From the IMG/VR virus record IMGVR_UViG_3300025121_000282, positions 248,001-312,000 of that record: a DNA stretch of 64,000 nt; one strand, written 5' to 3'. The notes under the pieces were generated by a model, which saw nothing but the letters and a program-made list of their open reading frames with translations, did no database searches and was not told the origin of the DNA. Positions 5,845 to 49,700 of this stretch are shown one piece after another; position 1 is the stretch's first letter; every line of letters starts with the position of its first letter. The position numbers were made by a program, and so were the translations under genes.

Positions 5845-5845
5845 G

Positions 5846-25019: not shown

Positions 25020-25150
25020 GCTTTGAAACCCAAGTTTTGTCATTATGTAACTGTCCATCTACTCCGTTACTTACACAATGGCGTGTTGTATGTCAATTGA
25101 CTAATTGAGCCTATGTGTGAAAAGTAGCCTGACTACATAAGAGAGTAAAA

Positions 25151-25681: not shown

Positions 25682-26091
25682 TCTTTTTGGGCTATACTAG
25701 GGAGTGAAGTAGGCGGGGCCACACTTTCTCCAAATCTTTGATTTTGTACGTGTGTTACAGCTTGGCTATAGTGTATTGGCACGTACTTTCCATCGGAAGT
25801 TCTGGCTACATTTGTAGCTTTTTCCTTTGAAATTACGTTCATCATGTCTGAGCGTCTGTGCTCCACACTAATCCATCTTTTTTCGGCGTCAGCCCCGACT
25901 ACCTTGTCTACATCCTGAAAATCGCTAGCTACAAACCCCGGTGCATTGAACTGAGCTTCAGGGGCAGATAGTGTCCTTCTGGCCTCCTTCTTACATTCAG
26001 TGCATTTCGTAGGGTCGTCTTTTTTGGAATTAGGCCGTAAAACTTCAAATTTTAAGTTACAATGTGCACACTTATACTCGTACAACGGCAT
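25678..26091 (-). CDS. FmdB-family zinc-ribbon protein with C-terminal extension
   Basis: MPLYEYKCAHCNLKFE...KCTEC. Confidence 0.85.
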   Translation of the reverse strand: MPLYEYKCAHCNLKFEVLRPNSKKDDPTKCTECKKEARRTLSAPEAQFNAPGFVASDFQDVDKVVGADAEKRWISVEHRRSDMMNVISKEKATNVARTSDGKYVPIHYSQAVTHVQNQRFGESVAPPTSLPSIAQKD

Positions 26092-26099
26092 GGGCCACC

Positions 26100-27305
26100 T
26101 TAAATCATTGGCTGATGTGAATTTCGATTACTACTCGGTATGGATGGGTCATTGGTGAAGAACAACCCCAAAGACTTCATCAATTTCAATGTTGATTTTA
26201 CAGTTATTGAGTCCAGGTTAGACATCTGTGCCAGTTCCTCAGCGATGGTGTCGTCATAGTCTCTAACTACCCGTACCAACTGAGGCAGCGGAAATGACAT
26301 GTGATAGTCAGACAGCATGGTGAGACTTATAGAACCTATGATGTAAGTGTCCTCTCCACTCTCGTCGTAGGCTTCTTCAGCTTCTCCACTGAAATCCATC
26401 TCTGTTATTTCTATGCCCTCGTAACTCAATTGGTTTCTCGATGGGCCCCACAACAAAACCCCTAGATAGTCTATCAACTCTTCAAACTGGATACTGTCTC
26501 TGGTAATAATATCAATACTCATGTTCATGTTCCATTGACCGCCATAATTCAAACTGGTAGCGACTCTGCCTTCTGTTATCACTATGGCGTGCTGATCCCC
26601 GTTTTGTACCCTGTTCCCGAAGGCTATAAACACTCCAGGCAGTGCAGTAGTATTTGACGTGTTTTCTTGCCATGAGAATGGCCCCATCGCATTACCCAAG
26701 TGCACATACTCAGCCCAAATATAATCTCCCGGGGAGAAATCTCTAAGAATGGAAATCTCTCCAGTGTCATAGTCCACAGAGTACTCTGACTCTATTAGTT
26801 GGATGTTGTCATTTTGTATTATTCTTAGCGACCCCTGTAACGGTACGTGAGCCAGAGTTATGGCATTTTCGTTGCCCGTAACAAATTTTATAAGTGGTTC
26901 TCTGTTCTCGTAGTACCAGGGGGTAATTGTAAAAGTGCCCTGTTTTTCTATATGTGACCCGCTGATGTCTAAAATGTACACACCCGGGTTTGTGGGGAAA
27001 TGACCACCATTGCGGTCTATGGCGTAAAGGTCGTCCTTAATCCATTCCACGGAAGTTCCGGGCTTGTCTGGCATCTTAGAGAGCATGGAGTAGGAAAGTA
27101 CAGTACCCAAGAAATTATCTGAAGACAGTTTCAATGGGCTTGCAGAGTTGTTGGACACCACTACAGCCATTTGAGGTCGGTCTTCAAAAGCCCACTTGCC
27201 CTGAACGAACGGCACCATTTTAACAAACTTGGGGTGGTCTAGTAGGTGCCGTTTTATCTCTCTTATCAGGCGCTCTTTTACTGATGATAGCAGCTTATAA
27301 TACAT
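26100..27305 (-). CDS. Tail completion/terminator-like protein
   Basis: 401 aa, upstream of the sheath. C-term MSIDIITRD...EELIDYL...ITEMDFSGE is typical of terminator-type folds. Call rests on position and motif. Confidence 0.55.
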   Translation of the reverse strand: MYYKLLSSVKERLIREIKRHLLDHPKFVKMVPFVQGKWAFEDRPQMAVVVSNNSASPLKLSSDNFLGTVLSYSMLSKMPDKPGTSVEWIKDDLYAIDRNGGHFPTNPGVYILDISGSHIEKQGTFTITPWYYENREPLIKFVTGNENAITLAHVPLQGSLRIIQNDNIQLIESEYSVDYDTGEISILRDFSPGDYIWAEYVHLGNAMGPFSWQENTSNTTALPGVFIAFGNRVQNGDQHAIVITEGRVATSLNYGGQWNMNMSIDIITRDSIQFEELIDYLGVLLWGPSRNQLSYEGIEITEMDFSGEAEEAYDESGEDTYIIGSISLTMLSDYHMSFPLPQLVRVVRDYDDTIAEELAQMSNLDSITVKSTLKLMKSLGLFFTNDPSIPSSNRNSHQPMI

Positions 27306-27314
27306 GGGGCATCC

Positions 27315-28004
27315 TTACTTAGGGTCTAAAATCCGGTCTACAACTGCCTTTTTTGACATACCGCGTTTTGTTGCTATGCCTCTTGCAGCAGCTATTTTCA
27401 TTAGTGTGTCCAACTTCATTCCCTCGTTGGGGACCACAGTTAGCAAGTCATAAGCAACCCCATCCGGTTCCTCAGAGAGGTCTACCGTGGAAGGGTTTTC
27501 CTCCAGGGTCTCCAGGGTCTCCAGGGTCGTTTCGACTGGTGTTTCCACAGCCTCCATAGTAACAGGTGCTACTACTATTGTCTCCACTATTTCAGGGACA
27601 GTGGGAACCTCGGATGCTACTGCTGCCACTACCTCGGGGACAATAGGGACCTCGGGGACAACAGGACTGATTGCTTCCAATTTCTCAGGAAGTGCAACTG
27701 GGGTTTCACACGCCTGAGCACGGACAGGAGCGCTGTATACTCTAGAGTTCTTCACTTCCAGAATCCATGCACCACCACTTTGCTTTAGTTTCTTTTCCAT
27801 GTCATTTAACTCCGACAGCAGTCTATGCAATTGTTTAACCAAAAAGTTGCTAGTACTTTTGGAAGGTACCAACGACTTTACACGAGTCAGGTGCAAAATC
27901 TCAATAGGTATACTTTCTAAATTAAAGTATAACTTCCTACCGGCCTTAAATTGTATATCATTGTATTTAAGTGGCCGAGTAGACCGTAGGCACACAGCTA
28001 GCAT
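27315..28004 (-). CDS. Hypothetical protein with low-complexity VPE/ETL linker and C-terminal HeH/Rho-N-like helix pair
   Basis: C-term MKLDTLMKIAAARGIATKRGMSKKAVVDRI; ctccagggt x3 at 27501-27527. Confidence 0.55.
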   Translation of the reverse strand: MLAVCLRSTRPLKYNDIQFKAGRKLYFNLESIPIEILHLTRVKSLVPSKSTSNFLVKQLHRLLSELNDMEKKLKQSGGAWILEVKNSRVYSAPVRAQACETPVALPEKLEAISPVVPEVPIVPEVVAAVASEVPTVPEIVETIVVAPVTMEAVETPVETTLETLETLEENPSTVDLSEEPDGVAYDLLTVVPNEGMKLDTLMKIAAARGIATKRGMSKKAVVDRILDPK

Positions 28005-28017
28005 AATATTTTCAGAG

Positions 28018-28674
28018 TCATAAAAGGTCCATAATGGATTTCTTAATTGTTTTAGTTATAGTCACTCTTGCTTTCTCTTGTAAGTGTTTTTTGAATTCAT
28101 GGACACCAGCCTTAATACTGCGTTGAATGAAATTATTTTTGTTTTCTATTTTTTGTGGTGTCCACTGCTTTTTTTCATTCTTAGGTATGGAGTATACTAC
28201 AGTATTTCCGTCTATTTTAACAGGCAGACTAGATTTATCAATACCTTGCTTGCTCGTGGTGCTGTTGGTTGCATTGAGTTTCTGTGCATTGAGTGCGGCC
28301 AACAGTGCAACCGGTGTCTTGCCAAATGTAGCATTGGGGCTTATACCTTTAATAATACTTTGTATTGACCTAGCTGTTCTAATGGTTACATTTGAATTTG
28401 GCAATTGGAATGTAACATCCCCCCTGTGCACTGCGTACTTAATCCCCTGTATGTTCAACTTGACACGGTTAGCTTGGTCCCCTGCTTCACGAGCGGCTTC
28501 GTGTGTGCACACTATAGAGACTTTATCACCCAACATCTGGACTTTAAAAGACCTAGTAAAATTACCAGTAGGGGCCTTTAAGTTTTGGGGCCTAATTGAC
28601 TTTCTTACACCGGATATGAAACCCTGGGCAGACTTAAGTAAATCTGATTGTGATAGTTTAATTAATTCGTTCAA
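28018..28674 (-). CDS. Basic neck/morphogenesis-type hypothetical protein
   Basis: 218 aa, K-rich, ends NFIQRSIKAG; ATGA-coupled to the upstream neck gene. Confidence 0.5.
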   Translation of the reverse strand: MNELIKLSQSDLLKSAQGFISGVRKSIRPQNLKAPTGNFTRSFKVQMLGDKVSIVCTHEAAREAGDQANRVKLNIQGIKYAVHRGDVTFQLPNSNVTIRTARSIQSIIKGISPNATFGKTPVALLAALNAQKLNATNSTTSKQGIDKSSLPVKIDGNTVVYSIPKNEKKQWTPQKIENKNNFIQRSIKAGVHEFKKHLQEKARVTITKTIKKSIMDLL

Positions 28675-34268: not shown

Positions 34269-34997
34269 TCACACCTCTATCAACAATTTTGGGTTGAATT
34301 TTGGGTTTTCTGATTGACGGGCATACCCGAACGGGTTACATACGAACCGGGTCAGCCCTAGCGTTTTATCTGTCGAGTCGTGTGTATGCCCGTAGACCCA
34401 GAGCTTCGGAGTCACCAAAGTACAGTCATCGATTCCTCCGACGAAAAACGCATTAAGTTTGCTACCCTGCCAACGTTCAGTCACCAGATCGTTGTGCGGG
34501 ATCATATGGGTAACAACCACGTCTGTTTCCATGACATTCTTTTGGATCATGTCCACGTCTCGGCGTCCACGTTCATAGACCCACGGTTCGAATTTGCGAA
34601 TAGTTGTGAAATCAGCCATTGAGTCGCGCCCAAACTTCTTGGTGTACTGCTCAGGTTCAGGGAACCAAAGTGTACCACCAATAAATCGCCGCCCACTGAT
34701 AGTTACAGGTTCGTCCCGGAGAAGATAGATGTTCCCAAATTGGGAACACATGGCAGCAATCTCGGCCTCGGCGACTGCAGCCACGGACCCATAGAATTCA
34801 TGATTGCCGAGGGTGTATACTACATTTGCATATTTCTTCGAGAACGTGGTCAGGATCGTCTTCAAAGACCCACCTTGAAGGACGCCCACGTCTCCCGCGA
34901 GAACAGCAATGTCCGCGTCTGCCAAATCAGCAACGAGGCTTTCACCGTGGTCCCGGTGGAATTCTGCGTGGAGATCAGAAACAATCAGCAGTTTCAA
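34269..34997 (-). CDS. Calcineurin-like metallophosphoesterase
   Basis: SDLH, AGD, GNHE, THMIPH, GHTH motifs; TTG start. Confidence 0.92.
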   Translation of the reverse strand: MKLLIVSDLHAEFHRDHGESLVADLADADIAVLAGDVGVLQGGSLKTILTTFSKKYANVVYTLGNHEFYGSVAAVAEAEIAAMCSQFGNIYLLRDEPVTISGRRFIGGTLWFPEPEQYTKKFGRDSMADFTTIRKFEPWVYERGRRDVDMIQKNVMETDVVVTHMIPHNDLVTERWQGSKLNAFFVGGIDDCTLVTPKLWVYGHTHDSTDKTLGLTRFVCNPFGYARQSENPKFNPKLLIEV

Positions 34998-36586: not shown

Positions 36587-36601
36587 ACATAGTCCTTTCG
36601 G

Positions 36602-36674
36602 TGCTCGCCCAGGGACTCGAACCCTGACCTGATCGATTTAGAGTCGACCCGCCTTGACATTTGGCCACACGAGC
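36602..36674 (-). tRNA. tRNA with CUA anticodon (amber suppressor type)
   Basis: GCTCGTG TG GCC AAATGTCAA GGC G GGTCGA CTCTAAA TCGATC AGGT CAGGG TTCGAGT CCCTG GGCGAGC A. Cloverleaf with a canonical T-arm and a C32 U33 CUA A37 A38 loop. Atypical points: G7.G66 mismatch, no D-loop GG, CCA not encoded (CCG). Confidence 0.85.
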
Positions 36675-36677
36675 GTG

Positions 36678-38213
36678 TTACTGTCTAAATAACACAAACT
36701 TTTTCTTTTCTTTACCAAACACTTTTACGTACCCTTTTGATTCAGCAAACTCCTTCTCTGTCATATGGCATCCAACGGCATGGTTGTATAAAGTCTTTTT
36801 GTGCATCATCCAACCAGTCGTGTCTACGTACACATAATCAGGCTTGGTAGTGGAAACATGTTCCCAATTTGAAGCTTGGTAGACGATGCCCTCATGGCCC
36901 ACGGTAGTATCGGCAAACGAAACTATTGCCTTGGTTTCTGGAAATTGGTCCCAGAAGTGTTTGGCCGATCTTGCTAAAAACCAAGACCCGAAATTAGGCT
37001 TGTGGCAGTCTGTTCTGATACAAAGTCTATCCAACTCCGACACTGTTTTTGGAGTAAGTCCTACTGAGGTGGACACCTCTTTTCTAACAACAGGAGCGAA
37101 CTTTGCCACTGCTATTAATTGGCCATCCAAGTAAGCCCCAAACATAAACTTTGCTTTACGACCACACTGGGCATAGTGCCAAGCTCTTAAAAATCTGTTA
37201 CCCTCAGAGTGCTCTATAGGCTTGACAATTAATTGGTTAAACTCGAATTCAGTTATTTTGGACTCGCTGACACCAATTACAGACTGAATTTTATCTTGAA
37301 CCAAATCAGGTATTAAAGTCTCATGCTCTTCTATACACAAAAGTAGTGAATCAGGGTTTGCAATTCTAAGATATGCTGATTTAGCAACGTCCCGCCTTTG
37401 GTTATTCGGAAGGTTGTGCCAATAATCACCTTGTACTTCAATGTATATATTAAAATCCGATAAATACAGGTCAAAATTATACGGACCCACAGATTTTTCT
37501 CTGGTGTATTTTATCTCAAGCAGGTCTAATACATCAGAAACCACTTTTTCAGGTTTAGACTGTCTGCCTGACCTAGAAAAGGCCTCTATACCAGCAGCTA
37601 TTTTAGCCCTGTACTCTGGATTTTTAAATCTTTCTTTTGCCAATTCACTGTGTATCTTTTTGTATTCTGGGTTCTGGATTGCCAAGTCATGGTTAGCTCT
37701 CGCCTCAGGCGTGTGCATTACTGACACTTTTTCCCTGAAGTATTTGTCTGGGTCGGCTTTATAATCCGCCTTGTTTCGTTCCGACACCAGCTGTTTATGC
37801 TGGTCTGACTGAAACATCTTGGTAATGCGGTCTTGCTGAAACTCCCTAAAATCTGGGTCTTCCCAAGCCTGTTTAGCTTGCTTAGACCTTTGGGCTCTGC
37901 CATCTTCAGAATTGGCTATGGCACCCAATATTTTTGACTGGTTGCTGACGTACTCTGGATTCGCCCAGGCTTGCTTGGATTGCTTAGACCTCTGAGCTTT
38001 TCCTTGAGGACTCTTAGCTCTGCACGGGGAACACCAGTATTCCCCGCGTTTTCTCAGAGTTCTATTTACAATAGACCTCTGATTGCATACAGACCTACCA
38101 CAACACTGATAGACTACCCACCCTCTTTGTTTAGGGGTGGGTAATCTATACCCAAAGTCTATTTCGTTGTGCTCTTGGTCGGAAATTTGTGCGTACAGTG
38201 TTGCTATATCCAT
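36678..38213 (-). CDS. Fusion: helical NUMOD-like repeats + DUF559/Vsr-like endonuclease + Mom-like GNAT domain
   Basis: KPEKVVSDVL...YNFDLYL....YIEVQGDYWH; C-term WHY...ELDRLC...SWFLARS...IVSFADTTVGHEGIVYQASNW. Confidence 0.75.
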   Translation of the reverse strand: MDIATLYAQISDQEHNEIDFGYRLPTPKQRGWVVYQCCGRSVCNQRSIVNRTLRKRGEYWCSPCRAKSPQGKAQRSKQSKQAWANPEYVSNQSKILGAIANSEDGRAQRSKQAKQAWEDPDFREFQQDRITKMFQSDQHKQLVSERNKADYKADPDKYFREKVSVMHTPEARANHDLAIQNPEYKKIHSELAKERFKNPEYRAKIAAGIEAFSRSGRQSKPEKVVSDVLDLLEIKYTREKSVGPYNFDLYLSDFNIYIEVQGDYWHNLPNNQRRDVAKSAYLRIANPDSLLLCIEEHETLIPDLVQDKIQSVIGVSESKITEFEFNQLIVKPIEHSEGNRFLRAWHYAQCGRKAKFMFGAYLDGQLIAVAKFAPVVRKEVSTSVGLTPKTVSELDRLCIRTDCHKPNFGSWFLARSAKHFWDQFPETKAIVSFADTTVGHEGIVYQASNWEHVSTTKPDYVYVDTTGWMMHKKTLYNHAVGCHMTEKEFAESKGYVKVFGKEKKKFVLFRQ

Positions 38214-38255
38214 ATATAACTATACAACCGTAACTATACGCTTTCGCAGTTACAT

Positions 38256-40679
38256 CTAACCCAAGTACACGTAGTCATCATGGAGAGCGCTGGTACCAAC
38301 CATCACCACGGGAAGTCCTGAGCAATTTTCCAGCATATCAATAAACGCTCTGGTTTCAGAGCTAAACTTGACTAATGCCTCTTTGCCCCCGCGCAGACCG
38401 ACGTCGATGTGGTTGATTTGATTCACAAAATTCAGTACAAGCTTGGTTGCACCGCAGGTTCTAGCAGCGTCCTTAAGCCCAATTTGGGAGAATGTCCCTA
38501 CGCGTCGAATGCGCTTAGTAACCGTGGTTCGCTCGCGTTCCGCCAACATTTTTGCCTCTTCCTCTGGCATGTTGGCTCTCTTTGCTATCTCATCCCAGGT
38601 CAATTCCTGTTGGTCGGGGTACCACCCTCCAGAATTCCCCAGTTCTTTGCCAGACTCGTCATACACGTTTCCAACCCTAATTGGGTGCGACCTTAAGTTT
38701 AAGTAGACGTCGCCCACCATGTTTGGGGGAATGGCCATATAGTCCATGGCTGCCTGAACTGTGCAGTTTCTAGAAGTGCAGTTTGGATAGTGTGAGCCGT
38801 GGTCAATACTCAGTGCATAGCCCTGGCTTCCTTCATGGAGCCAGTAGTCACCCTTACTGATGATTTTGTGGGTGGCATCACGAAATGCCATGCCGTTGGT
38901 GATTTGAATGTTTCCAGGGAGGTCTATTGGTGCTGGTGTGTTACCAACCAGGGGCACATTCTGCTTCCGTAAAACCTTATCAGCCAGGGCGGTCCCGGAA
39001 CCCTGCATAGTGGAGGCTAGGTGCTTGGTGCTTTCTGCTCCCTCACGCTCTCGTGCAGCGTGGTCCTCGGTTACAATACCTGCACGATCATGAACATAAA
39101 GGTCTGGTCCACCACACTCCTCATACTCCTTGATGAACTGTTCCCAACGAAAAGATGAACCGGGAGAAATCCATCCAGCAACCTCACGGCCAAGTGCTTT
39201 CTTCAGACCGCATGCGGTGGGCAGAGCCTTGGCTACAAACTTCCCATCTTTCAAATTCGGGTGAGCAATAGTGTTGTGTGAAATAGCACCATTGGCTAGA
39301 TAACTGTGGGTTTGGGGCATGGTTACATCAAAAACCCGTTCTTCCCCAATTGCCAAATTGACTTCTTTGATGTCTACTACATGATAGTCCTCGGCCAATT
39401 TAACTAAGCCGGTAAATCCAGCCGCTCGGAGTGTGGCGGCATTGCGTAAAACATACGCACCTGCGATGGCTCCATTCTCAGTTGAATTCGTGCTGTGTGC
39501 AGCTTTGCGTATTTGAATCAAACGGTTATAATTGAGATTGATGAGAGAGCCTTGAGACCAATCAGCATCGTATGTGGCTATTTCCACATTTAATCTAGCC
39601 GACTTGACCTCTGAAAGAAAACCTACTCGCTCACGAAAAAGGGTTAAATTTTCCAAACCCGCCATCTCAATTTGATGTGATCGACTGCGAGAAGGTCGCT
39701 TGTCCTGGTAGGACCGGTAAGTGGAATTAATACCCAACAACAATAATAACTGTTGGGCCATCAGCACCACATCTTTTGAAATGTTGCCAAAAGAAACCCT
39801 TCGCTTTTTGGCCGACCCATCCGAGTCAAACAGACCCCGCAGAAATGCTCCAATTATTTCAGGGGTGCCCACAGTGACAGCAGTCGGTATCTCTTTTTCG
39901 GCTTTAGTAGCTAGCTTCAACCCCACTTGTTCAAAGATCTGGCGAAGTTCGGAAATACTGCAGGTTTCCAGAACGTGGCACTGTTTGTCTTTTACCTTGT
40001 AAACATTCCATGGGATGCCGATGCCATCGTAAAATTTTTGAGTCTTGCAGCAAACATCCATCTGGTCAGAGTGGAACGCTATGCTAACATTTGCCTTTTT
40101 GGGACTGTAACACCCATCACCAACCAACAGCCCCAGGTATTCAGCCATTAATAATTCGTCTGGTTTATTTGTCAGTGCGGTTCCATTCGCTCTGTGTATC
40201 AGGGATAACATGTCTATAGGTAGACTGGTTCCCACCCAGTTAGTCTTTTTAGGAAATAAAAACTGGTGTACTCCAGGTACTAAATCCATTGACCGTATCC
40301 ACTGTGGGGCGTTTTCAGTGGGGTCCCAAACATAGTACTGATGTATGTCAGTACATTTGTACTCAATGCCATTCTTGAGTTTGATTTTGTTGACTACTCT
40401 AACCCCGTCATCAACCAAATCTGTAGGCGACTCCCAACAGCCGTCCATGTTGAGAAGCTGCAGACCCTTTTGGTTCTGAGTGACAATATCCCCAAGCTTT
40501 TTTAATCCCCGGTCAGTGGGGATTATGGCGTCAAAAGTTTGACAGTGGCCTGCATTGGGATAGTTGGCAGAAGACACATTTCGGACATTGAAAATATCCA
40601 CCAAACGAGACGACAAAGCTCCCTTACCTGAGCTACCCCAGGCTTGGTCGAGGACAACATTGAACTTTCCAGGCTGCAT
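38256..40679 (-). CDS. purZ: Adenylosuccinate-synthetase homologue with PurZ signatures, interrupted by an intein
   Basis: GSSGKG (Ser in place of the PurA catalytic Asp), NAGH|T, ASTMQG, EGSQGY...YPNCTSR, RSHPIRVG, NSGGWYPDQ.ELTW, TTVTKRIRR, NFVN. Confidence 0.8.
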   Translation of the reverse strand: MQPGKFNVVLDQAWGSSGKGALSSRLVDIFNVRNVSSANYPNAGHCQTFDAIIPTDRGLKKLGDIVTQNQKGLQLLNMDGCWESPTDLVDDGVRVVNKIKLKNGIEYKCTDIHQYYVWDPTENAPQWIRSMDLVPGVHQFLFPKKTNWVGTSLPIDMLSLIHRANGTALTNKPDELLMAEYLGLLVGDGCYSPKKANVSIAFHSDQMDVCCKTQKFYDGIGIPWNVYKVKDKQCHVLETCSISELRQIFEQVGLKLATKAEKEIPTAVTVGTPEIIGAFLRGLFDSDGSAKKRRVSFGNISKDVVLMAQQLLLLLGINSTYRSYQDKRPSRSRSHQIEMAGLENLTLFRERVGFLSEVKSARLNVEIATYDADWSQGSLINLNYNRLIQIRKAAHSTNSTENGAIAGAYVLRNAATLRAAGFTGLVKLAEDYHVVDIKEVNLAIGEERVFDVTMPQTHSYLANGAISHNTIAHPNLKDGKFVAKALPTACGLKKALGREVAGWISPGSSFRWEQFIKEYEECGGPDLYVHDRAGIVTEDHAAREREGAESTKHLASTMQGSGTALADKVLRKQNVPLVGNTPAPIDLPGNIQITNGMAFRDATHKIISKGDYWLHEGSQGYALSIDHGSHYPNCTSRNCTVQAAMDYMAIPPNMVGDVYLNLRSHPIRVGNVYDESGKELGNSGGWYPDQQELTWDEIAKRANMPEEEAKMLAERERTTVTKRIRRVGTFSQIGLKDAARTCGATKLVLNFVNQINHIDVGLRGGKEALVKFSSETRAFIDMLENCSGLPVVMVGTSALHDDYVYLG
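39273..40544 (-). mobile_element. Intein (424 aa) with LAGLIDADG homing endonuclease
   Basis: Starts CQTFDAII, ends VFDVTM...HSYLANGAISHN, with Thr at +1. LAGLIDADG blocks YLGLLVGDG and FLRGLFDSDG. Confidence 0.95.
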
Positions 40680-40681
40680 GA

Positions 40682-42370
40682 CTAAACTCTCCTAACCCAC
40701 TTGGTTTTTGGCACCTCTGATACTGTACAGAGACCGGTATACTCTACAAACTGTCGTTCTGTCATATGGTTTGACAGTGCTTGATCATACACAGTACGTT
40801 TGTGTATGTATCTCACTGTGACTGGGTCAAAATAATGATACGATTCCCCGGTCTGGCCCGCTTCAATAAAACTACAGGCTTTGTACAAGCCACCAGAATC
40901 ACCAACATTGGGGTCAGAAAATGAAACCAGTAACTTTAGCTTTGGGCTTTCTGATTTATAGGCACCAATTAACTTAGACATACAGTAAGAAGATAGATTA
41001 TTCACATCCAGTCCAGACCTTACGCAAAACCGTCTAATCTCTCTGACACTACCTGGATTCAACTTACCCAGCCCCAGTTGCTCTGCGGTTTTTTTGACAG
41101 TTCCGTGTCGGGTTACACCACCAAATACCAGCAAACACACCAATGTGTCCTTAAAATAAGCCCCATAGGGAGAGGCTGCTGTCCCCAAAGTGCCCAAGTA
41201 ATGATTGGTGGTTAGAAACACGTGGGCTTCTTTTAACGGAACAGGTCTAAACTCCAAGTCCGACAACTGAAATTGTATTGGTTCTTCAATGGCTCGCAAA
41301 ATGTGATAGTCCAACACTTTACGAAGTCTTCCCAGATGCAGTTCATGCTCCCATAACCACACTAACTTATACTTTGAATACTTTTCTATGTATGTAGCTT
41401 TGGCCTTATCTCTGGGTGTTCCAGAGTACCCGTTGTCTTTAAAATTGTGAAGATAATCACCATGGGTCTCTATCAACAAATTGCATAATGGTACATAAAA
41501 ATCAAACGAGTATGGGCCCACCGTGAAACTGCGTTCGAATGGAACCTTATAGTGGGACTCCAAAATGGAGGCTACTATCCTTTCTGTAGTAGGGTTCTGT
41601 AATTTCTCTTTGACACCCGGGATGTCAAAACCAGATTCTGACCCGTATAATTTCAGTAAGGTAGTTCTGCGTTTAATGGCTTTACATTTGGCAGACCCAC
41701 AGGTTAACGGGTGGGCCTGGGTGTAATACGACATCTTGGTTTCAGAGGTATTGTCACACACATAACACTTATAAATTATGGTCTTTTCACACAGTGGGAA
41801 TATTTTCGTGGCCTTGTACCCAAATTTAACAAACGTGGCATCGTCATCAGCCCATGCATAGTCTGGGGGCTTTCGTTTCGACAACCAAAAGTCATGCTTA
41901 CTTTGTGTGGATTCTTCGCGAATCCAAGTAGCAGCCACAGGACTGCACAGTTTGCAGCACACTACTTTGTTGCTTCTGGATAGACTTTGCAAACTGGTAG
42001 TGTACTGCTCTAGGCAAAATTCACATACAGCTTCAACAGCTTTTTCTGACCTTGGAGACAGTGTGTCTAGGCCATACCCATGTTTGGCTATGGTCAACAA
42101 AGAGTCTGCCCCAGCGGGCCGTTTAAGTACACTTAATAAATAGTACTCTCTAGGTGTTGTTTGTTTCTGCCTTACCCAATGAGATTTTAACTGATCGCAG
42201 CCCGAACAGGCATCTGGCGGAACGCGTCCAGGTTTGGAAAACTGATATTTCTTCCTCTCAAACACTTCTAAACAGAAATCGCATTGCACCACTACAGGTT
42301 TCTTAGACTGTGGCGCTAAGTCACTGTACCGATATCCGTATTTCTCAACAGTCAAGTCATCTTGGTGCAT
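40682..42370 (-). CDS. Fusion: three CxxC zinc-ribbon repeats + DUF559/Vsr-like endonuclease + Mom-like GNAT domain
   Basis: Repeats (T.xKxGY...S.K.V...CxxC) x3; ERIVASIL...YSFDFYV....LIETHGDYLH; NHY...EIRRFC...LVSFSDPNVGDSGGLYKACSF. Likely start is the ATG at 42370, 6 nt after TATAAT. Confidence 0.75.
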   Translation of the reverse strand: MHQDDLTVEKYGYRYSDLAPQSKKPVVVQCDFCLEVFERKKYQFSKPGRVPPDACSGCDQLKSHWVRQKQTTPREYYLLSVLKRPAGADSLLTIAKHGYGLDTLSPRSEKAVEAVCEFCLEQYTTSLQSLSRSNKVVCCKLCSPVAATWIREESTQSKHDFWLSKRKPPDYAWADDDATFVKFGYKATKIFPLCEKTIIYKCYVCDNTSETKMSYYTQAHPLTCGSAKCKAIKRRTTLLKLYGSESGFDIPGVKEKLQNPTTERIVASILESHYKVPFERSFTVGPYSFDFYVPLCNLLIETHGDYLHNFKDNGYSGTPRDKAKATYIEKYSKYKLVWLWEHELHLGRLRKVLDYHILRAIEEPIQFQLSDLEFRPVPLKEAHVFLTTNHYLGTLGTAASPYGAYFKDTLVCLLVFGGVTRHGTVKKTAEQLGLGKLNPGSVREIRRFCVRSGLDVNNLSSYCMSKLIGAYKSESPKLKLLVSFSDPNVGDSGGLYKACSFIEAGQTGESYHYFDPVTVRYIHKRTVYDQALSNHMTERQFVEYTGLCTVSEVPKTKWVRRV

Positions 42371-42478
42371 ACCTGCATTATACACAAAAGTGTGGCACTA
42401 ACGGCAAGGGTGCTATACATTAAAAATTACTTCGTACTTGGTTGTACAATACCATCAGACCCACAACAGGAAGACACA

Positions 42479-43334: not shown

Positions 43335-43470
43335 GGGGCTCTCTCCATCTTTGTTGCGTAGACACTATTAATTTTACATTTGTGGGCCCCAAATAACAAC
43401 TCCTATGGTGCACTTCTAAATACAGATTGACAAGCAGGTGTGGTACACAAATTATTTGTTGGAGGGTTAC

Positions 43471-44535
43471 ATGTCTAATTTAGATTTCGATCTAGTAAAA
43501 CACACAATAGTCATGACGAGAGGTGGGTCTGTCTCTTATGGAATGGCTACGCCCACCTCGGATTTAGACATCAAGGGTATTTTTATACCCCCAGAAGAGT
43601 ATACCCTAGGGTTTTATCTAAATTGTGAAACCATCAATAAGAACGAGGATTTAGAACTGTTTAGACACTTGTTAAATCAAGATAGTCTCAGGTATGTTGA
43701 CAATGGCCTTGAGGGGTCTGTTTATTCATTAGTAAAATACTTATTCTTAGCCGCCAAGGGAAACCCAAACATACTGGAAGTACTGTTTTGCGAAGAGGAA
43801 GATGTAATACACACCTCTGAGGAGGGTGAGATTCTTCGTGAGCACAGAGGTCTATTTTTAACCCAAGTTGTTAGACACCAATACGTTAGATATGCAATGG
43901 CTCAACTTGAAGATATTAAACGGCACAAGTCGTATTTGCTTAACCCCATAAAAAACAAGCCCACCCGATCTGATTTTGGGCTACCTACCCAGCCTGCAAT
44001 TAAGAAACACAAACTCGGGCTAATTGAAGCTGCAATTAAAAAACAGACAGACAGAGGGTACACTAGAGACCAAGCATTAAAAATTTTGGTAACGTACCCT
44101 GAGTACGAGAAGGACTTAAGTACACCAAACTTTATTGCAAATCTAAATGGGGAGGCTGCTTATACCAGTGCCGCCACTACATACACACGTCAGCAGCTTC
44201 ATTGGGAAAATAGAAACGCAAAAAGGGCAGCATTAGAGGCAAAGTATGGATTTGATACTAAACACACCTCACATGTTGTTAGGCTACTAAAAACGGGGCA
44301 TGAGATTTTAACTCAAGGGAAGTTAACAGTCCGCAGACCAGATTTCGAGGAATTGTTGGCTATCCGTGCTGGCTCATGGAGTTATGAGGAAGTAATGACT
44401 TGGGCCAATGACATGGTAAGAAAAATAAATTATGACTCTTTGGATTCCCCAATTCCATTAGAGCCGGATATGGTGGCTATCAACAATTTGTGTGTAAGAT
44501 TACACAAGATGTTTTACAAAAAGTTGGGATTTTGA
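43471..44535 (+). CDS. RlaP/YcgL-like Pol-beta nucleotidyltransferase (RNA-repair associated family)
   Basis: GGSVSYGMATPTSDLDIKGIF, KGNPNILEVLF, FDTKHTSHVVRLL, LLAIRAGSW; SD GGAGG. Confidence 0.85.
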   Translation: MSNLDFDLVKHTIVMTRGGSVSYGMATPTSDLDIKGIFIPPEEYTLGFYLNCETINKNEDLELFRHLLNQDSLRYVDNGLEGSVYSLVKYLFLAAKGNPNILEVLFCEEEDVIHTSEEGEILREHRGLFLTQVVRHQYVRYAMAQLEDIKRHKSYLLNPIKNKPTRSDFGLPTQPAIKKHKLGLIEAAIKKQTDRGYTRDQALKILVTYPEYEKDLSTPNFIANLNGEAAYTSAATTYTRQQLHWENRNAKRAALEAKYGFDTKHTSHVVRLLKTGHEILTQGKLTVRRPDFEELLAIRAGSWSYEEVMTWANDMVRKINYDSLDSPIPLEPDMVAINNLCVRLHKMFYKKLGF

Positions 44536-45041: not shown

Positions 45042-45580
45042 AGAACCAGTATGTATTTTCTTTTGATGTAGAGAGTGTTGGGCTGTGGGGTCCATCTTTT
45101 GCTGTAGGCTGGGTGCTATTCTCACCTTTGGGTGCTGCCTTGTCATCTGGTATACTAGCCTATGACCCAAAGTTGTGTCCACCTACTTATTCTTTTGCAG
45201 ACGAGGAATGGGTTGCCACCAATATACCTCCACTTCCATATAAGTGTAATTCTTTATTTGAAGTGACATCTAAGTTCGAACAAACCTTACGAGAAGTGCA
45301 GTCGTTTGTATTAAATCAGAACCCATACGGATACATCTTGTATTTGGCTGATTGTCCACACCCGGTGGAGACAAACTTTTTACGAGAATGCCATCAACAC
45401 TTTCCAGTTACAAATACAATAATGCACCCTCTTGTTGACTTGGGGTCAATCAGACTAGCTAAGGGGTTAAATCCTACAAGTGTAGAGCCTAGACTGCCAC
45501 TTGAACTGCCCATCCACGACCCAAGGTGTGACGCTTTGCAGTCTGGGAGGCTATATTTTGAGGCTATGCGTCGGGGATAA
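45038..45580 (+). CDS. DEDDh 3'-5' exonuclease/exoribonuclease-like protein
   Basis: FSFDVESVGL (ExoI), ETNFL (ExoII-like), HDPRCDA (ExoIII); ATGA coupling. Confidence 0.75.
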   Translation: MKNQYVFSFDVESVGLWGPSFAVGWVLFSPLGAALSSGILAYDPKLCPPTYSFADEEWVATNIPPLPYKCNSLFEVTSKFEQTLREVQSFVLNQNPYGYILYLADCPHPVETNFLRECHQHFPVTNTIMHPLVDLGSIRLAKGLNPTSVEPRLPLELPIHDPRCDALQSGRLYFEAMRRG

Positions 45581-45584
45581 ACCA

Positions 45585-46043
45585 CTACTTGGGGAGCTTA
45601 CTTAACAAGTCTCCCACTTTTATACCACTATCGTCTTTAATTTTTACTACATAAACTTGTGGTTTTATGCTAATCACTTGAGACACATGCTTGTCTTCTA
45701 TACCGACTGGCAACGCAATGTCTACTTTGTTTCCATTGTCTGTAATAGTGATCTTTTCTTTGTCTCTTAGGGGATTTTTAGATAATTCTATTGGGTGCGT
45801 TTTGATTTCAACCCAATACTTGGCGTCAGGAGCACCCACAGGCACGGGTCTAACTGGTTCGGATTCTAAAATTATGTCTAGTGGGTCTGTGTAGTCTCGT
45901 ATTTTTAAAAGTTTCTTTATTATACCGCCAAAATTTAAAACGTCAGATTGACCTAATACCACACAAAACAGCGCCACAAGTACGAATAATACGAGTGGCG
46001 CTGCCATTACCAACCAGCGAGGTAGTCTTTTTAGTACTTCCAA
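45585..46043 (-). CDS. N-terminally membrane-anchored protein (possible lysis accessory)
   Basis: One TM helix at the N-terminus; close to the holin. Confidence 0.5.
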   Translation of the reverse strand: MEVLKRLPRWLVMAAPLVLFVLVALFCVVLGQSDVLNFGGIIKKLLKIRDYTDPLDIILESEPVRPVPVGAPDAKYWVEIKTHPIELSKNPLRDKEKITITDNGNKVDIALPVGIEDKHVSQVISIKPQVYVVKIKDDSGIKVGDLLSKLPK

Positions 46044-46044
46044 T

Positions 46045-46323
46045 TCACTTGATGCTGTTTAATACAGATGCAAGTTTATTTAGCGAAACATCAATGCTTG
46101 TGGGAACAGAGGCGATCTTGTACTTTTCAAGTAAAACCTTTTGTGCTGCCTCAAGTGTGTTCTCTGCATTTTCAACAGCACGATGCACGTTGCCCAAAAA
46201 GGAATCCCCTGCATTTCCCTTTTTAGCTTCCTCTAGTCCTAGCTTCAACGATTTTAGCTGAACTAGAATTTCAGAAACCTTGGCTTTGGCAGAATTGGGG
46301 GTGAGTGCTGTTTTGGTGCTCAT
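46045..46323 (-). CDS. Helical hypothetical protein
   Basis: 92 aa, ATGA-coupled to the holin. Confidence 0.55.
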   Translation of the reverse strand: MSTKTALTPNSAKAKVSEILVQLKSLKLGLEEAKKGNAGDSFLGNVHRAVENAENTLEAAQKVLLEKYKIASVPTSIDVSLNKLASVLNSIK

Positions 46324-46688
46324 TTGGCGCGAGCCTTATTTAACTGGGCTTCTATGACGGCTTCAAGGCTGTGTACGTGGCTGTCCACCCACTCATCCAT
46401 GCCGGCCTTCTTGGCCTCTTTCTTGACGTATTCGATGGCCTTCTGAAGCTTCTCTTCACTTGACGTAGGACTATCTACCTTCAACTTCTTGTGTGCGTAT
46501 TCTTCCGCACTGGAAATACCAGACTTTATTAGACCTAGAAGTCTAGACTCCATCTCAGAGTCTATCTGGATCTGGAACTTGGCCTCAATTACTTTAACCA
46601 GCTGGCGTCCCAAAACTGTTAAAACTCCTGCCACAATCATCACCACTACAGGAAGCAGGTTGTCCAGCATTATCTTTAGGTATTCCAT
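46320..46688 (-). CDS. Phage holin (LL-H-like, single N-terminal TM)
   Basis: TM followed by GISSAEE...EEKLQKAIEYV...IEAQL. Confidence 0.7.
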   Translation of the reverse strand: MEYLKIMLDNLLPVVVMIVAGVLTVLGRQLVKVIEAKFQIQIDSEMESRLLGLIKSGISSAEEYAHKKLKVDSPTSSEEKLQKAIEYVKKEAKKAGMDEWVDSHVHSLEAVIEAQLNKARAK

Positions 46689-46723
46689 TATTAACTCCTT
46701 TAACCAAATTTGGTATAAAAGTA

Positions 46724-49700
46724 TTAGGCCAACTGATTGTTTCGGTTTGGTAGAGCTACCAATGGATGCCCTTTGATACGGTACCTGTCCACAGCCGAAA
46801 ATCCTTCCCCAACACCGTTGTGCCCGATTCTGGAGTGTAAGTTCTTTAGTACAGAACTAGATACAGTATTATATTCTACGCTAGTAGACACCACAAGTTG
46901 GAGTTCACCACCCCGATGTATAACCACTCCGTCATGTTGTTCTTCTACTGTTCGCACCAAGCATGCAATACCTACTAGAACCGGGGATAACGAGTATGTT
47001 TCTTTCGGTGTTTCCAGCGTCGCTGCATCCACAGTTATGGGGCCATAATTACCATTTCTTCTGATCAAAGAACCAGTGTCACCTCTATAAGTACGAAATT
47101 GGGTACCCATGGTATCCGTATTTACACCCTTAGACAAGACCATGGTGGCCCCAAAACCCGGAACCATGACGGTCTGCGGGTCGCTAAAGTCAATACTGTC
47201 CCTGTCGGTTTGGGCTTGAGATGACACTATCCTGCTCAGCACATTTATTGCAAAATTAGACAACTTTCCATCAAATTTATAGTCTTGTCCCACAAAGTTC
47301 TTGTCTAAAAATAAACGACCCATGGGCAGTCTGGTTGTAGCCCCAGCGTACCTTGGGTGAATAAACGACCCATAATCACCTCCAGCCACCCCCACAAAAT
47401 TTATCGGCAAATCTTCACTCTGGATGTCATACTCATATGCAGAATCCAGAATCGACCATTTTTCTACTACGGTATTGCCGTTGAATCCAGCTATTCTTCC
47501 CGTGCCCAAGGTTGTAGCAAAACAAATAGAATCCATTACCTCAAACGACACAGGCTCAACCAAGTCTGTGTATGTGTCTGTTGTAGAGATAGCAGTACGA
47601 CCTGCTACCGAGATAGCACCTCTGCGGTCCACTTTGTCATACGTGCCAGTTATAGGGTCTCCTTGGTATGGCCTACGTGTGTAAGTGACAGCAATGTCTG
47701 CTTCTTTATTCCCAGCAGAGCCTCTAACCGGTCCAGGGGTGACTAGGTACACATCCCCGTTTTCCAAAAGTCTATCAGCCCACACATCACTATCCACAAC
47801 CCCACCCGGGGCGCCTTGTCTAACTACAAGCTTTTGACTTGTGGCATAACCCTCTGTGGACCCCACCAAGAATCCTCTGCTAAAACCGAAACAAGTAGCT
47901 TCCACTACATACTTACCAGAATCAAACGAAGCAATGGCATTTGGCGATCTAGTAATGTCTACCATCGATTCATCTAAAACGAAAGTCCCATCTTCCTCGG
48001 CATCAAGCCAGTACCAGAGCGGGACACCCTCACAGTCGTCCCTTAACAAGTTCACGGCTTTTCCTACGGTGCTACTAAGGGGCTCTCTTGTAGTCTCGTC
48101 TGTAGATGTTCCGTTGTCTCTAAAGTCTCCAACCTCGTATACCGCCCACAACCTAGCAATACCGTGGAATGTCGAGAACTGAATACCAGACCTACCCCAC
48201 GGAGTTTGGGAAGCAGTTACAACTCTGCACCCAATTCTCTTATTCTCTACGTCTACACCAACTTGTCTATTAAATCCCGTGGCTACAGGGACATCGTCGA
48301 CAGTATGAGTCATAAAAGTGACCCAAGTACTGCCTGAGGTGGCATAATCAAGGATGCCTGAGTTTACAGTTTGGCTGCTTCTAGCTTGCACAAAACAATT
48401 GATACCACCTGAATAAACAAAATTACCATCATTAGTGGGGTAGCGTGTGCCGTACTGTACCGGATACACCGGAACGTCAATTCCCACATACGGTTTGCTT
48501 GTGTGTATTATAGTCGGGAAAATACCGGGCGGAATCTCTATACTTCGAGTATTGTCCCAGATGCCAAGGGGGTCGTGTGCATCCTTGTTAGGAAAAGACC
48601 CCGTACTCGGGTCTTCAGTTATAGGCATTGTGGCATATGTTATTACCTGTAATGGGTATAACTTTATTTGCTGCCAGGGCGTAAGCATGAAGGTCTTTGA
48701 CCCGGGGTCCACATAACAAGCTGTCAGAGTGGGTTGGTCATTTTCATAATAATTGGTGTGTACACTATGGTGCATCTGTATAGGCTGAGTTTTAGTTATA
48801 ATGTTATTTCGGGGCAACAATAAATCTTTGTGCCCTTCCAATATTGATACACTTAGTATCTTTTCGGGTCTTCTACTTAAACCATGTCCCCCTGTAGTTA
48901 GGGTCGTGTACCTCAAGTAGCATCTGTAACTAGAATCAAATACGGCGTCCCCTGTGGGAGCAGGTGCACCACTGATATACACACACATGTCCTCATCATA
49001 GGCGAATGGGGAACTGCTCGATGGGCTTATTGGCGTATCTATTATGGCAGTGCTGGCATCAATGTTATAAGCTAATAGCGTGGCATCCGCTGAGGACCCA
49101 GTACCATAGTATGTGTTTTGTGTGTGCTCAGTTGTAAGCCCGTCTGTCCAAATGGACACTAGCTCTTCATTTACGCCCCTCCCCGGATATTGTCTACTAT
49201 CCGAAAGAGGAACTAGAGTGATGGGAGTTGGGCCTCCTGGAAACACAAACCTGTTTTGAGCACCCCCAACATTGTGTGGATATATACGAACTCTTATAAC
49301 GTCACCGTTGGAAAACTTATTTGCCACTGTTTGTTTTATGATATTTATGGCATGGGCATCTAACGTGTAATTTGAGTCTACTGCGCTAACATCGTCCCCT
49401 ACATTTACTATGGCAGTATGCGGCTTTAGGGCCACCACATGGTGTCGCCAGGGAGTTGCAGCATCGGACCAAACAGTACGCAAGCCATTGGCACTTTCCC
49501 CTATAGAATACGCACCCGGCATGTCTTGATCGTCATCAGAAAACCGGTCGGTAGACACTAACAGAGGGCCAACACAAGAAGAATCTTGTTGATCCATCTT
49601 CCAAGTGGAATCCAAATTTCCACCCATAAGATCCATAAAAGTACTTATCAATAAGTTGCGGTCGGTATTCGTGTTTACAGTATGTCTTAAGTCTAGTATG

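What the first reader, a model, noticed from the sequence alone, without database searches (positions are those of the whole stretch)
39273..40544. LAGLIDADG intein inserted in the catalytic NAGH|T motif of PurZ
Seen: a 424-aa Cys...His-Asn intein with Thr at +1, splitting the conserved NAGHT motif, whose His is catalytic in the AdSS family. Inference: an intein in purZ is unusual. It makes precursor synthesis depend on splicing and suggests homing among purZ-carrying phages. It also raises the question of how the endonuclease recognises Z-substituted DNA.
Basis: partly seen in the sequence, partly recalled or inferred. Interest (0 to 1): 0.6.

Follow-up and report, generated by a model that had tools for sequence, protein, structure and literature searches.

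The report
Homing intein splitting a jumbo-phage PurZ
A 315-kb groundwater phage carries a self-splicing, endonuclease-bearing intein exactly inside the catalytic NAGH|T motif of its PurZ-like enzyme; it is an ordinary kind of intein in a host gene where none seems to have been described, and it recurs at the same site in about 18 other metagenomic phage lineages.

Summary
Window 39273-40544 (- strand) encodes a 424-aa class-1 intein with Cys1, T65-x-x-H68, two LAGLIDADG motifs that keep their acidic residues (D143, D242), a C-terminal His-Asn and Thr at +1. It sits in an 807-aa ORF and splits NAGH|T of an adenylosuccinate-synthetase homologue. An AlphaFold model (pLDDT 93) matches the TliVMA, PI-PfuI and PI-SceI inteins.

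The host protein is PurZ-like. It has Ser in place of PurA Asp13, its best PDB and NCBIfam matches are PurZ, and it is sister to characterised PurZ in a quick tree. It is below the PurZ model cut-off, and the 314.9-kb genome has no detectable DatZ or MazZ, so a Z-genome is not shown.

The intein is not unique. Homologous inteins occupy the same site in 18 other protein clusters, one of them a PurA-type enzyme. Two unrelated intein families occupy a second site (HYPx|CTS). At least 486 homologues are intein-less. Presence is patchy, and one pair of genomes about 92% identical differs by precise in-frame insertions, which indicates mobility.

No paper on an AdSS or PurZ intein was found. Verdict: a new member of a known kind, of moderate interest.

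The parts
38256..40679 (-). Precursor ORF: PurZ-like adenylosuccinate-synthetase homologue interrupted by an intein (807 aa plus stop)
40545..40679 (-). N-extein, 45 aa, ending in NAGH (His45 corresponds to E. coli PurA His41)
40620..40637 (-). P-loop GSSGKG; Ser16 stands where PurA has the catalytic Asp13, which is the PurZ signature
   Evidence: PMC12884076
39273..40544 (-). Intein, 424 aa: Hint splicing domain plus a double-motif LAGLIDADG endonuclease
40515..40544 (-). Intein block A (CQTFDAIIPT), with Cys1 as first nucleophile
40341..40355 (-). Intein block B, CTDIH (T65-x-x-H68); T65 and H68 are invariant in all 19 site-a inteins
40107..40145 (-). LAGLIDADG motif 1, AEYLGLLVGDGCY; putative catalytic Asp143 at 40116-40118
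39807..39845 (-). LAGLIDADG motif 2, FLRGLFDSDGSAK; putative catalytic Asp242 at 39819-39821
39273..39335 (-). Intein blocks F and G, VFDVTMPQTHSYLANGAISHN, ending in His423-Asn424
38259..39272 (-). C-extein, 338 aa; Thr+1 at 39270-39272
38778..38780 (-). Cys codon of HYPN|CTS. This is the second intein insertion site of the gene family. It is empty in this genome.
36678..38213 (-). Context: downstream neighbour, 511 aa, with a nuclease-like region plus a Mom-family domain
   Evidence: PMC7824862
40682..42385 (-). Context: upstream neighbour, 567 aa, paralogue of the other one (30% identity). It stops 2 nt before the purZ start codon.

Best explanation
This is a canonical class-1 'large' intein, a Hint splicing domain with a nested double-motif LAGLIDADG homing endonuclease. 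It lies in the purZ-like gene of an uncultured 314.9-kb groundwater jumbo phage, between His45 and Thr of the catalytic NAGHT motif. After translation, Cys1 attacks the His45-Cys46 peptide bond. The acyl group passes to the hydroxyl of Thr+1. Asn424, helped by His423, cyclises and releases the intein. An O-to-N shift then restores NAGHT in a 383-aa enzyme, so the enzyme is made only if splicing occurs. The free intein, or the precursor, is expected to cut intein-less purZ alleles of co-infecting relatives near ...CCNAAYGCNGGNCAY|ACN.... Repair from the intein-bearing copy then spreads it (homing). The intein belongs to an old family specific to this site of AdSS-type genes, and purZ of huge phages is an intein hot spot with two sites and three intein families. 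Shown here: the anatomy, the fold, the exact insertion site, homologous inteins at the same site, and empty versus occupied alleles in near relatives. Inferred: splicing, endonuclease activity and target, and the dGMP-to-dSMP (PurZ) chemistry of the host enzyme.
For: All splicing blocks and both LAGLIDADG acidic residues are present. Pfam, NCBIfam and PDB sequence hits are to inteins. The AF2 model (pLDDT 93.1, pTM 0.92) best matches TliVMA, PI-PfuI, PI-SceI and PI-TkoII. The insertion is clean relative to an HMM of 120 intein-less homologues. Eighteen other clusters carry a homologous 414-436-aa intein at the same site, always with Thr or Ser at +1. L012 (both inteins) and L013 (none) are about 92% identical in DNA and differ by precise in-frame insertions of 1269 and 1140 bp. 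P0016 and P0019 have near-identical exteins and differ at site a. Intein presence is scattered on the extein tree; starred branches alone force at least 8 changes. Intein GC is 0.45 against 0.50-0.51 for the exteins. In S-2L PurZ, H52 and T53 contact the (d)ATP triphosphate (PMC8342488). The host enzyme has Ser for Asp13 and PurZ is the top hit.
Against: There is no experimental evidence of splicing or cleavage. No intein-less allele of this phage itself was found: the nearest extein is about 64% identical, the nearest intein 51%, and the contigs show no intein-less joint. Recent homing in this particular lineage is therefore not shown. Deep clades of the intein tree match extein clades, so much of the pattern could be vertical descent with repeated precise loss. 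Three family members have Asn in place of the first catalytic Asp, so endonuclease decay does occur in the family. The Pfam Intein_splicing score is below its gathering cut-off (29.5 against 35.8 bits).
Confidence: 0.85

Rival explanations
1. The intein still splices but is a fixed passenger. Its endonuclease no longer homes, and the patchy distribution reflects an ancient invasion followed by many precise losses.
For: The query intein is only 38-51% identical to its relatives. Deep intein clades mirror extein clades. No empty allele was seen in the metagenomes that hold the phage. Some relatives have GNG instead of GDG in motif 1.
Against: Both catalytic Asp residues and the conserved Lys are kept here. 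The endonuclease domain is modelled with high confidence. Many pairs of inteins are more alike than their exteins, for example P0006 and P0036 at 52% against 41%. A PurA-type host (P0175) carries the same intein family. The query intein is sister to that of P0023 (100*), while their exteins are placed apart, although that placement is weakly supported.
Confidence: 0.3
2. The host enzyme is not a PurZ. It would be a divergent PurA-like enzyme with another role, such as AMP synthesis or another purine substrate, and the phage DNA would contain ordinary adenine.
For: No DatZ (HD or YfbR-like), MazG, DUF550 or DUF5664 was found in this complete genome or in three related jumbo records, while the DatZ model finds phiVC8 and ZP6. 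The NCBIfam PurZ score is far below its cut-off (140 bits; 194 for the intein-less P0056, against 300), and the archaeal-type PurA model is nearly as good (186). Pyrococcus PurA scores 143 bits against 157-175 for PurZ.
Against: Ser replaces Asp13, as in 100% of phage PurZ and PurZ0, whereas 99% of PurA sequences keep Asp. The best PDB, PHROG and NCBIfam hits are PurZ. The clade shares the insertion after IRVG that the S-2L paper links to deoxyribose preference. In a quick tree it is sister to characterised PurZ, excluding PurZ0 and bacterial PurA.
Confidence: 0.3
3. The insert is not an intein but an inserted domain or an assembly artefact.
For: None beyond the sub-threshold Pfam Intein_splicing score.
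Against: All splicing motifs are present, the fold is that of an intein, and the in-frame boundaries are exact. Identical sequence, including both junctions, stands in contigs of independent runs.
Confidence: 0.01

Closest known systems
Large LAGLIDADG inteins of the VMA type: TliVMA (7QSS), PI-PfuI (1DQ3), PI-SceI (1VDE, 1LWS), PI-TkoII (2CW7)
   Same: Same bipartite architecture: a split Hint domain with a nested two-motif LAGLIDADG endonuclease. Cys1, TxxH and a terminal His-Asn are present. The size is about 420-450 aa. Foldseek E values are 1e-23 to 1e-13, with TM up to 0.70.
   Different: Sequence identity is only 11-19%. The host protein is different (an AdSS-family enzyme rather than V-ATPase, RNR or polymerase). 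The +1 nucleophile is Thr. The host organism is a phage.
PurZ of Vibrio phage phiVC8 (6FKO, 6FM1) and cyanophage S-2L (7ODX)
   Same: AdSS fold. P-loop GS(S/T)GKG with Ser in place of Asp13. The NAGHT motif and the EG(S/A)QG...YPxCT(S/A)R motif are shared. The profile scores 175 and 157 bits. It is the sister clade in a quick tree.
   Different: Identity is about 30-32%. The protein is about 40 aa longer, with extra segments. It is encoded by 200-430-kb phages without detectable datZ or mazZ neighbours. It is below the NCBIfam PurZ cut-off. The characterised PurZ genes that were examined carry no intein.
Phage inteins in nucleotide-metabolism and replication genes (RNR, helicases, terminase); from general knowledge, and from this genome's own RecD2-like and DnaB-like helicase inteins
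   Same: Insertion in a highly conserved catalytic motif of a phage gene, a nested LAGLIDADG endonuclease, and sporadic distribution among relatives.
   Different: The nearest inteins outside AdSS genes are only 23-29% identical, in MetK, RNR and helicases. The site-a family is confined to AdSS-type hosts.

Membership tests
Class-1 intein (Hint-domain protein-splicing element) | Cys or Ser as first residue | tested here: met
   Cys1 (precursor residue 46); invariant in 19 of 19 relatives
Class-1 intein (Hint-domain protein-splicing element) | Block B TxxH | tested here: met
   T65-D-I-H68; T65 and H68 are invariant
Class-1 intein (Hint-domain protein-splicing element) | C-terminal His-Asn followed by Cys, Ser or Thr at +1 | tested here: met
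   H423-N424 | T; TIGR01443 scores 21.6 bits against a cut-off of 15.6
Class-1 intein (Hint-domain protein-splicing element) | Hint fold formed by the N- and C-terminal parts | tested here: met
   AF2 pLDDT 93.1; Foldseek hits to intein structures at E down to 1.7e-23
Class-1 intein (Hint-domain protein-splicing element) | Precise in-frame insertion relative to intein-less homologues | tested here: met
   HMM of 120 intein-less homologues aligns at positions 1-51 and 50-392; empty and occupied alleles L013 and L012
Class-1 intein (Hint-domain protein-splicing element) | Pfam Intein_splicing (PF14890) above the gathering score | tested here: not met
   29.5-31.6 bits against 35.8. The model spans the split Hint domain, and the large endonuclease insert lowers the score.
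Class-1 intein (Hint-domain protein-splicing element) | Splicing actually occurs | not testable with these tools
   Needs expression and mass analysis
LAGLIDADG homing endonuclease (double-motif, monomeric) | Two LAGLIDADG helices, each with a terminal acidic residue | tested here: met
   YLGLLVGDG (D143) and LRGLFDSDG (D242); Pfam LAGLIDADG_3 E 1e-18
LAGLIDADG homing endonuclease (double-motif, monomeric) | Alpha-beta-beta-alpha-beta-beta-alpha fold repeated twice | tested here: met
   Structural matches to I-DmoI, I-Tsp061I and the endonuclease domains of PI-SceI and PI-PfuI
LAGLIDADG homing endonuclease (double-motif, monomeric) | Site-specific cleavage of the intein-less allele | not testable with these tools
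   Only indirect evidence: patchy distribution and empty/occupied pairs
PurZ (succino-amino-deoxyadenylate synthase) | Adenylosuccinate-synthetase homology | tested here: met
   PF00709 E 2e-18; PDB hits
PurZ (succino-amino-deoxyadenylate synthase) | Ser in place of PurA Asp13 | tested here: met
   GSSGKG aligned to GSTGKG of phiVC8 and S-2L; criterion from PMC12884076
PurZ (succino-amino-deoxyadenylate synthase) | NCBIfam NF038379 above its cut-off (300 bits) | tested here: not met
   140 bits for the C-extein and 194 for the intein-less homologue P0056. It is the best model but below cut-off, and archaeal-type PurA scores 186.
PurZ (succino-amino-deoxyadenylate synthase) | Phylogenetic placement with PurZ rather than PurA or PurZ0 | tested here: inconclusive
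   Quick ML tree: sister to characterised PurZ inside a 95* group that excludes PurZ0 and bacterial PurA. There are long branches, no archaeal PurA in the set, and the careful search did not finish.
PurZ (succino-amino-deoxyadenylate synthase) | Companion Z-cluster genes (datZ; mazZ or DUF550) | tested here: not met
   No hits in G000 or in three related jumbo records. The DatZ model does find phiVC8 and ZP6. The DUF550 and DUF5664 searches had no positive control.
PurZ (succino-amino-deoxyadenylate synthase) | dGMP + Asp + (d)ATP gives dSMP; Z in virion DNA | not testable with these tools
   Needs an enzyme assay or nucleoside LC-MS
Canonical PurA | Catalytic Asp13 in GDEGKG | tested here: not met
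   Ser16 at that position; purA equivalog models are far below their cut-offs

The most novel reading that the evidence does not exclude
This large clade of huge phages (at least 486 protein clusters, on contigs up to 436 kb) really does replace adenine by 2-aminoadenine, by a route that needs no DatZ or MazZ. Three independent LAGLIDADG intein lineages then home within Z-substituted DNA. They would be natural meganucleases that cut DNA resistant to most restriction enzymes. In this phage, purZ would sit in a purine-modification cluster between two nuclease-Mom fusion genes that may further acylate the same base.
Probability: 0.2. Interest if true: 0.7.

Novelty: new member of a known kind. 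Interest (0 to 1): 0.45.

Why it matters
It adds the adenylosuccinate-synthetase/PurZ family to the list of intein host proteins. It shows that in huge phages this gene is a repeated target: two catalytic-motif sites and three intein families. It also points to a large PurZ-like clade in 200-430-kb phages that lacks the usual dATP- and dGTP-clearing partners and that I did not find discussed in the literature searched. If those phages do make Z-DNA, the intein endonucleases offer a direct experiment on how a sequence-specific nuclease reads 2-aminoadenine. Thr+1 inteins that restore a catalytic NAGHT motif could also serve as splicing-dependent switches of Z synthesis. If the enzyme is not a PurZ, the finding is only one more phage intein.

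Tried and rejected
Megablast of the gene against 50,697 phage records found nothing. tblastn finds only homologues at 37% identity or less among cultured phages.

An IMG/VR scan with the C-extein gave 10 loci, at most 59% identical and all intein-less at site a. No close relative of this phage turned up.

Contigs of four runs were laid on 36600-42400. There were no joints and no intein-less form. Contigs drop rare variants, so this is no proof of absence. X9 and X10 may be one data set filed twice.

L010 and L011 are 99.95% identical for 3.7 kb upstream. Divergence begins about 300 bp before site a and continues downstream at about 80%. I considered a co-conversion tract centred on the intein and rejected it as unproven, because the boundary lies near the gene start and the divergent tract runs for more than 6 kb.

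I asked whether the flanking Mom-domain genes are insertions absent from relatives. L007 and L009 share no neighbour at all with this genome, so nothing can be concluded. Adjacency of Mom and purZ is not general.

The careful IQ-TREE search did not finish in two 300-s runs, so only the quick tree is reported.

Literature searches for PurZ or adenylosuccinate together with intein gave no relevant paper. InBase could not be consulted.

The exteins were searched separately by reference, or the whole precursor was used with a region. The large representative search was not used, because the word search and family scans settled the question.
Full report
**1. What is in the sequence**

The window lies at 248001-312000 of a 314,886-bp virus record. 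CheckV rates it 100% complete, and its GC content is 47.1%. Runs that hold the stretch are groundwater metagenomes from several studies.

On the minus strand, 38256-40679 is one open frame of 807 codons. It divides as follows.
- Residues 1-45 (40545-40679) read MQPGKFNVVLDQAWGSSGKGALSSRLVDIFNVRNVSSANYPNAGH.
- Residues 46-469 (39273-40544) run from CQTFDAIIPT... to ...THSYLANGAISHN.
- Residue 470 is Thr (39270-39272). It starts a 338-aa C-terminal part.

**2. It is an intein**

- Pfam finds LAGLIDADG_3 (E 1e-18), Hom_end, and Intein_splicing. The last is below its gathering score, at 29.5-31.6 against 35.8 bits.
- NCBIfam finds the intein C-terminal model above its cut-off. It also finds the intein portions of intein-containing DnaB, RNR, GyrA, IF-2, RFC and RecA models.
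- By sequence, the nearest solved structures are the TliVMA intein and a DnaX mini-intein.
- An alignment of 19 homologous inteins (A2) shows these invariant residues: Cys1, T65 and H68 (block B, TxxH), G142 and G144 of motif 1, D242-G243 of motif 2, D406, H413, H423 and N424.
- The query has YLGLLVG-D143-G and LRGLFDS-D242-G, so both LAGLIDADG acidic residues are kept.
- AlphaFold2 on that alignment gives pLDDT 93.1 and pTM 0.92.
- Foldseek against the PDB returns TliVMA (E 1.7e-23, TM 0.70), PI-PfuI, PhoVMA, PI-SceI and PI-TkoII. These are followed by free LAGLIDADG enzymes such as I-DmoI.
- An HMM built from 120 intein-less homologues aligns to the precursor at positions 1-51 and 50-392. 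The 424 residues are thus a clean insertion.

**3. The host protein**

- The C-extein matches Pfam Adenylsucc_synt and PHROG 1211, which is annotated as the PurZ product.
- Its best solved relatives are phiVC8 PurZ and S-2L PurZ.
- The 45-aa N-extein aligns to phiVC8 PurZ 25-63 and S-2L PurZ 19-58, both ending in PNAGH.
- The P-loop is GSSGKG, so Ser16 stands where E. coli PurA has the catalytic Asp13.
- According to PMC12884076, Asp13 is kept in 99% of PurA sequences and is Ser in 100% of 147 phage PurZ and PurZ0 sequences.
- In S-2L PurZ, H52 and T53 (the H|T pair split here) contact the triphosphate of (d)ATP (PMC8342488).
- That His41 is a catalytic residue in PurA is established enzymology, which I cite from general knowledge.
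- A profile of 32 intein-less homologues scores 175 bits on phiVC8 PurZ, 157 on S-2L PurZ and 143 on Pyrococcus PurA. It scores 80-105 on bacterial and eukaryotic PurA, and 93 on PurZ0 of phage Archimedes.
- The clade also shares the insertion after IRVG that the S-2L paper links to deoxyribose preference.
- In a quick maximum-likelihood tree rooted on bacterial PurA, the jumbo-phage clade (98*) is sister to the characterised PurZ clade (phiVC8, ZP6, JeffCo, BCSR129; 97*). Both lie inside a 95* group that excludes PurZ0.
- Caveats on that tree: branches are long, archaeal PurA was not in the set, and the careful search did not finish.

Evidence against a simple PurZ label:
- The NCBIfam PurZ model is the best hit but far below its cut-off. 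It scores 140 bits for the C-extein and 194 for the intein-less P0056, against a cut-off of 300. The archaeal-type PurA model scores 186.
- The genome has no hit to HD, YfbR-like (DatZ), MazG, DUF550 or DUF5664.
- The DatZ model finds phiVC8 and ZP6 but none of three related jumbo records, one of which is rated complete.
- A family-A DNA polymerase is present.

I therefore call the protein PurZ-like. I put the probability that it has PurZ chemistry at about 0.65. Z-substitution of the genome is unproven.

**4. The intein is not alone**

I searched with the C-extein region while allowing only long proteins. This returned about 40 interrupted homologues of 737-1212 aa, on contigs up to 383 kb. 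Searching with the intein region added two more.

*Site a.* Nineteen clusters, the query included, carry NAGH|C...(S/A)HN|(T/S) at exactly this position.
- The inteins are 414-436 aa long, clearly homologous, and 33-51% identical to the query.
- One host, P0175, has GDEGKG and QAGH|C. It is a PurA-type enzyme with Asp13 and His41 at the E. coli positions.
- The family therefore follows the conserved AGH|T motif rather than one narrow lineage.
- Outside AdSS genes, the nearest inteins are only 23-29% identical. They lie in MetK, RNR, helicases and FtsH.

*Site b.* A second site, HGSHYPx|CTSR, is occupied in at least 23 clusters by two unrelated intein families.
- One runs CLSGDSRV...NVEN|C, is about 375 aa long, and is of LAGLIDADG_2 type.
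- The other runs CYSPDT...GHN|C and is about 400 aa long.
- Four proteins carry inteins at both sites.
- Site b is empty in this window (Cys codon 38778-38780).

*Intein-less homologues.* At least 486 clusters at E <= 1e-20 have no intein. The best are 54-62% identical, about 390-420 aa long, and lie on contigs up to 436 kb.

**5. Evidence for mobility**

- On a tree of the extein segment between the two sites (164 proteins), intein states are scattered. The 18 site-a carriers need 17 changes. Well-supported branches alone force at least 8 changes for the site-a-only group, 9 for site-b-only and 4 for the double carriers. Sampling is biased, because the intein-less set consists of the 120 best hits.
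- L012 carries both inteins and L013 carries none. They are syntenic and about 92% identical in DNA on every flank. They differ by exact in-frame insertions of 1269 bp at site a and 1140 bp at site b.
- L010 and L011 differ by a 1254-bp site-a intein in an otherwise near-identical extein.
- Around site a, the N-extein side of the target is conserved at the nucleotide level in seven alleles: AAYTWYCCNAAYGCNGGNCAY | ACN.
- Many intein pairs are more similar than their exteins.
- The query intein is sister (100*) to that of P0023, whose extein is placed elsewhere.
- Against pure horizontal spread, deep intein clades mirror extein clades.
- The best reading is an old, site-specific intein family maintained by cycles of homing and loss.
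- For this phage itself no empty allele was found, neither in IMG/VR nor in contigs of four runs.
- The intein is less GC-rich (0.45) than the exteins (0.50-0.51).

**6. Mechanism**

The mechanism is inferred from the conserved residues and the established class-1 pathway.
1. An N-S shift occurs at Cys1.
2. The acyl group is transferred by trans-esterification to Thr+1.
3. Asn424 cyclises, helped by His423.
4. An O-N shift gives a 383-aa enzyme with NAGHT restored.

The N-extein is only 45 aa and carries the P-loop and the catalytic His. The unspliced precursor is therefore very unlikely to be active, so synthesis of the product depends on splicing.

The endonuclease is expected to cut the empty allele near the insertion point and to be copied in during repair. 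If the DNA does contain Z, the extra 2-amino group lies in the minor groove. LAGLIDADG enzymes cleave across the minor groove, which is why the A-DNA versus Z-DNA comparison would be informative. This last point is inference.

**7. Context noticed**

- The genome carries at least three further LAGLIDADG inteins. They lie in a RecD2-like helicase, a DnaB-like helicase and an unassigned 1066-aa protein.
- purZ is flanked on both sides, on the same strand, by the only two Mom-domain genes of the genome. The upstream one ends 2 nt before the purZ start.
- Their architecture is a nuclease-like region plus a Mom domain. Iyer et al. describe this architecture in jumbo phages as a predicted restriction-plus-momylation module (PMC7824862).
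- The adjacency is not seen in relatives.

**8. Comparison, novelty and limits**

The element is a standard large intein. What is new is the host protein, the recurrent targeting of two catalytic motifs of that protein in huge phages, and the exposure of a large PurZ-like clade without DatZ or MazZ.

No paper in the library mentions an intein in PurZ or in adenylosuccinate synthetase. InBase could not be checked.

The exteins were handled separately by reference.

Noticed in passing
window 36678-38213 (-) and 40682-42385 (-): purZ is sandwiched between the only two Mom-family (PF25680) genes of the 315-kb genome. Both have N-terminal Cys-rich repeats, a PD-(D/E)xK/Vsr-like motif (GPYxFDxY...IExxGDYxHN) and a C-terminal Mom domain, and they are 30% identical to each other. 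PHROGs label the family 'homing endonuclease/HNH'. Iyer et al. 2021 describe such REase-Mom fusions in jumbo phages as a predicted restriction-plus-adenine-acylation module. Two adenine-N6-modifying genes next to an adenine-replacing gene is curious. The adjacency is not seen in relatives.
   Followed up: partly
genome G000 2993-6454 (+), 24999-28199 (+), 45576-48407 (+) (loci L014-L016; outside the window): There are three further LAGLIDADG inteins in the same genome. They lie in a RecD2-like helicase (1153 aa), an unassigned 1066-aa protein and a DnaB-like helicase (943 aa). The phage is intein-rich.
   Followed up: partly
P0175 (828 aa, metagenomic; no locus fetched): A PurA-type adenylosuccinate synthetase, with GDEGKG and with Asp13 and His41 at the E. 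coli positions, carries a homologue (33% identity) of the same intein at the same AGH|T site. The intein family therefore crosses the PurA/PurZ divide.
   Followed up: partly
window 38778-38780 (-); proteins P0005-P0040; loci L010-L012: There is a second intein site in the gene family, HGSHYPx|CTSR, which is empty in this window. Elsewhere it is occupied by two unrelated intein families. One of them ends in Glu-Asn instead of His-Asn. Some intein-less alleles have Ser, Thr or Ala instead of Cys at that +1 position.
   Followed up: partly
loci L007, L009, L010-L013: In relatives, purZ lies one to a few genes from a ThyX gene. In L007 and L008 it lies directly after a protein with a faint match to deoxynucleotide monophosphate kinase. 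This is a nucleotide-metabolism neighbourhood that the present genome does not share; tblastn finds only PurZ in common.
   Followed up: partly
L010 3777-4072 compared with L011: Two phage contigs are 99.95% identical for 3.7 kb. They become about 80% identical from roughly 300 bp upstream of the site-a intein onward. This is a mosaic boundary at the start of purZ, and its link to the intein is unproven.
   Followed up: partly
window 43438-44535 (+) and 34269-34997 (-): Near purZ there is an RlaP-type nucleotidyltransferase (PHROG 388, E 2e-57) and a calcineurin-like metallophosphoesterase (PHROG 1649, E 1e-38). A phosphoesterase could in principle stand in for the missing dATP- or dGTP-clearing enzymes. 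This was not tested.
   Followed up: no
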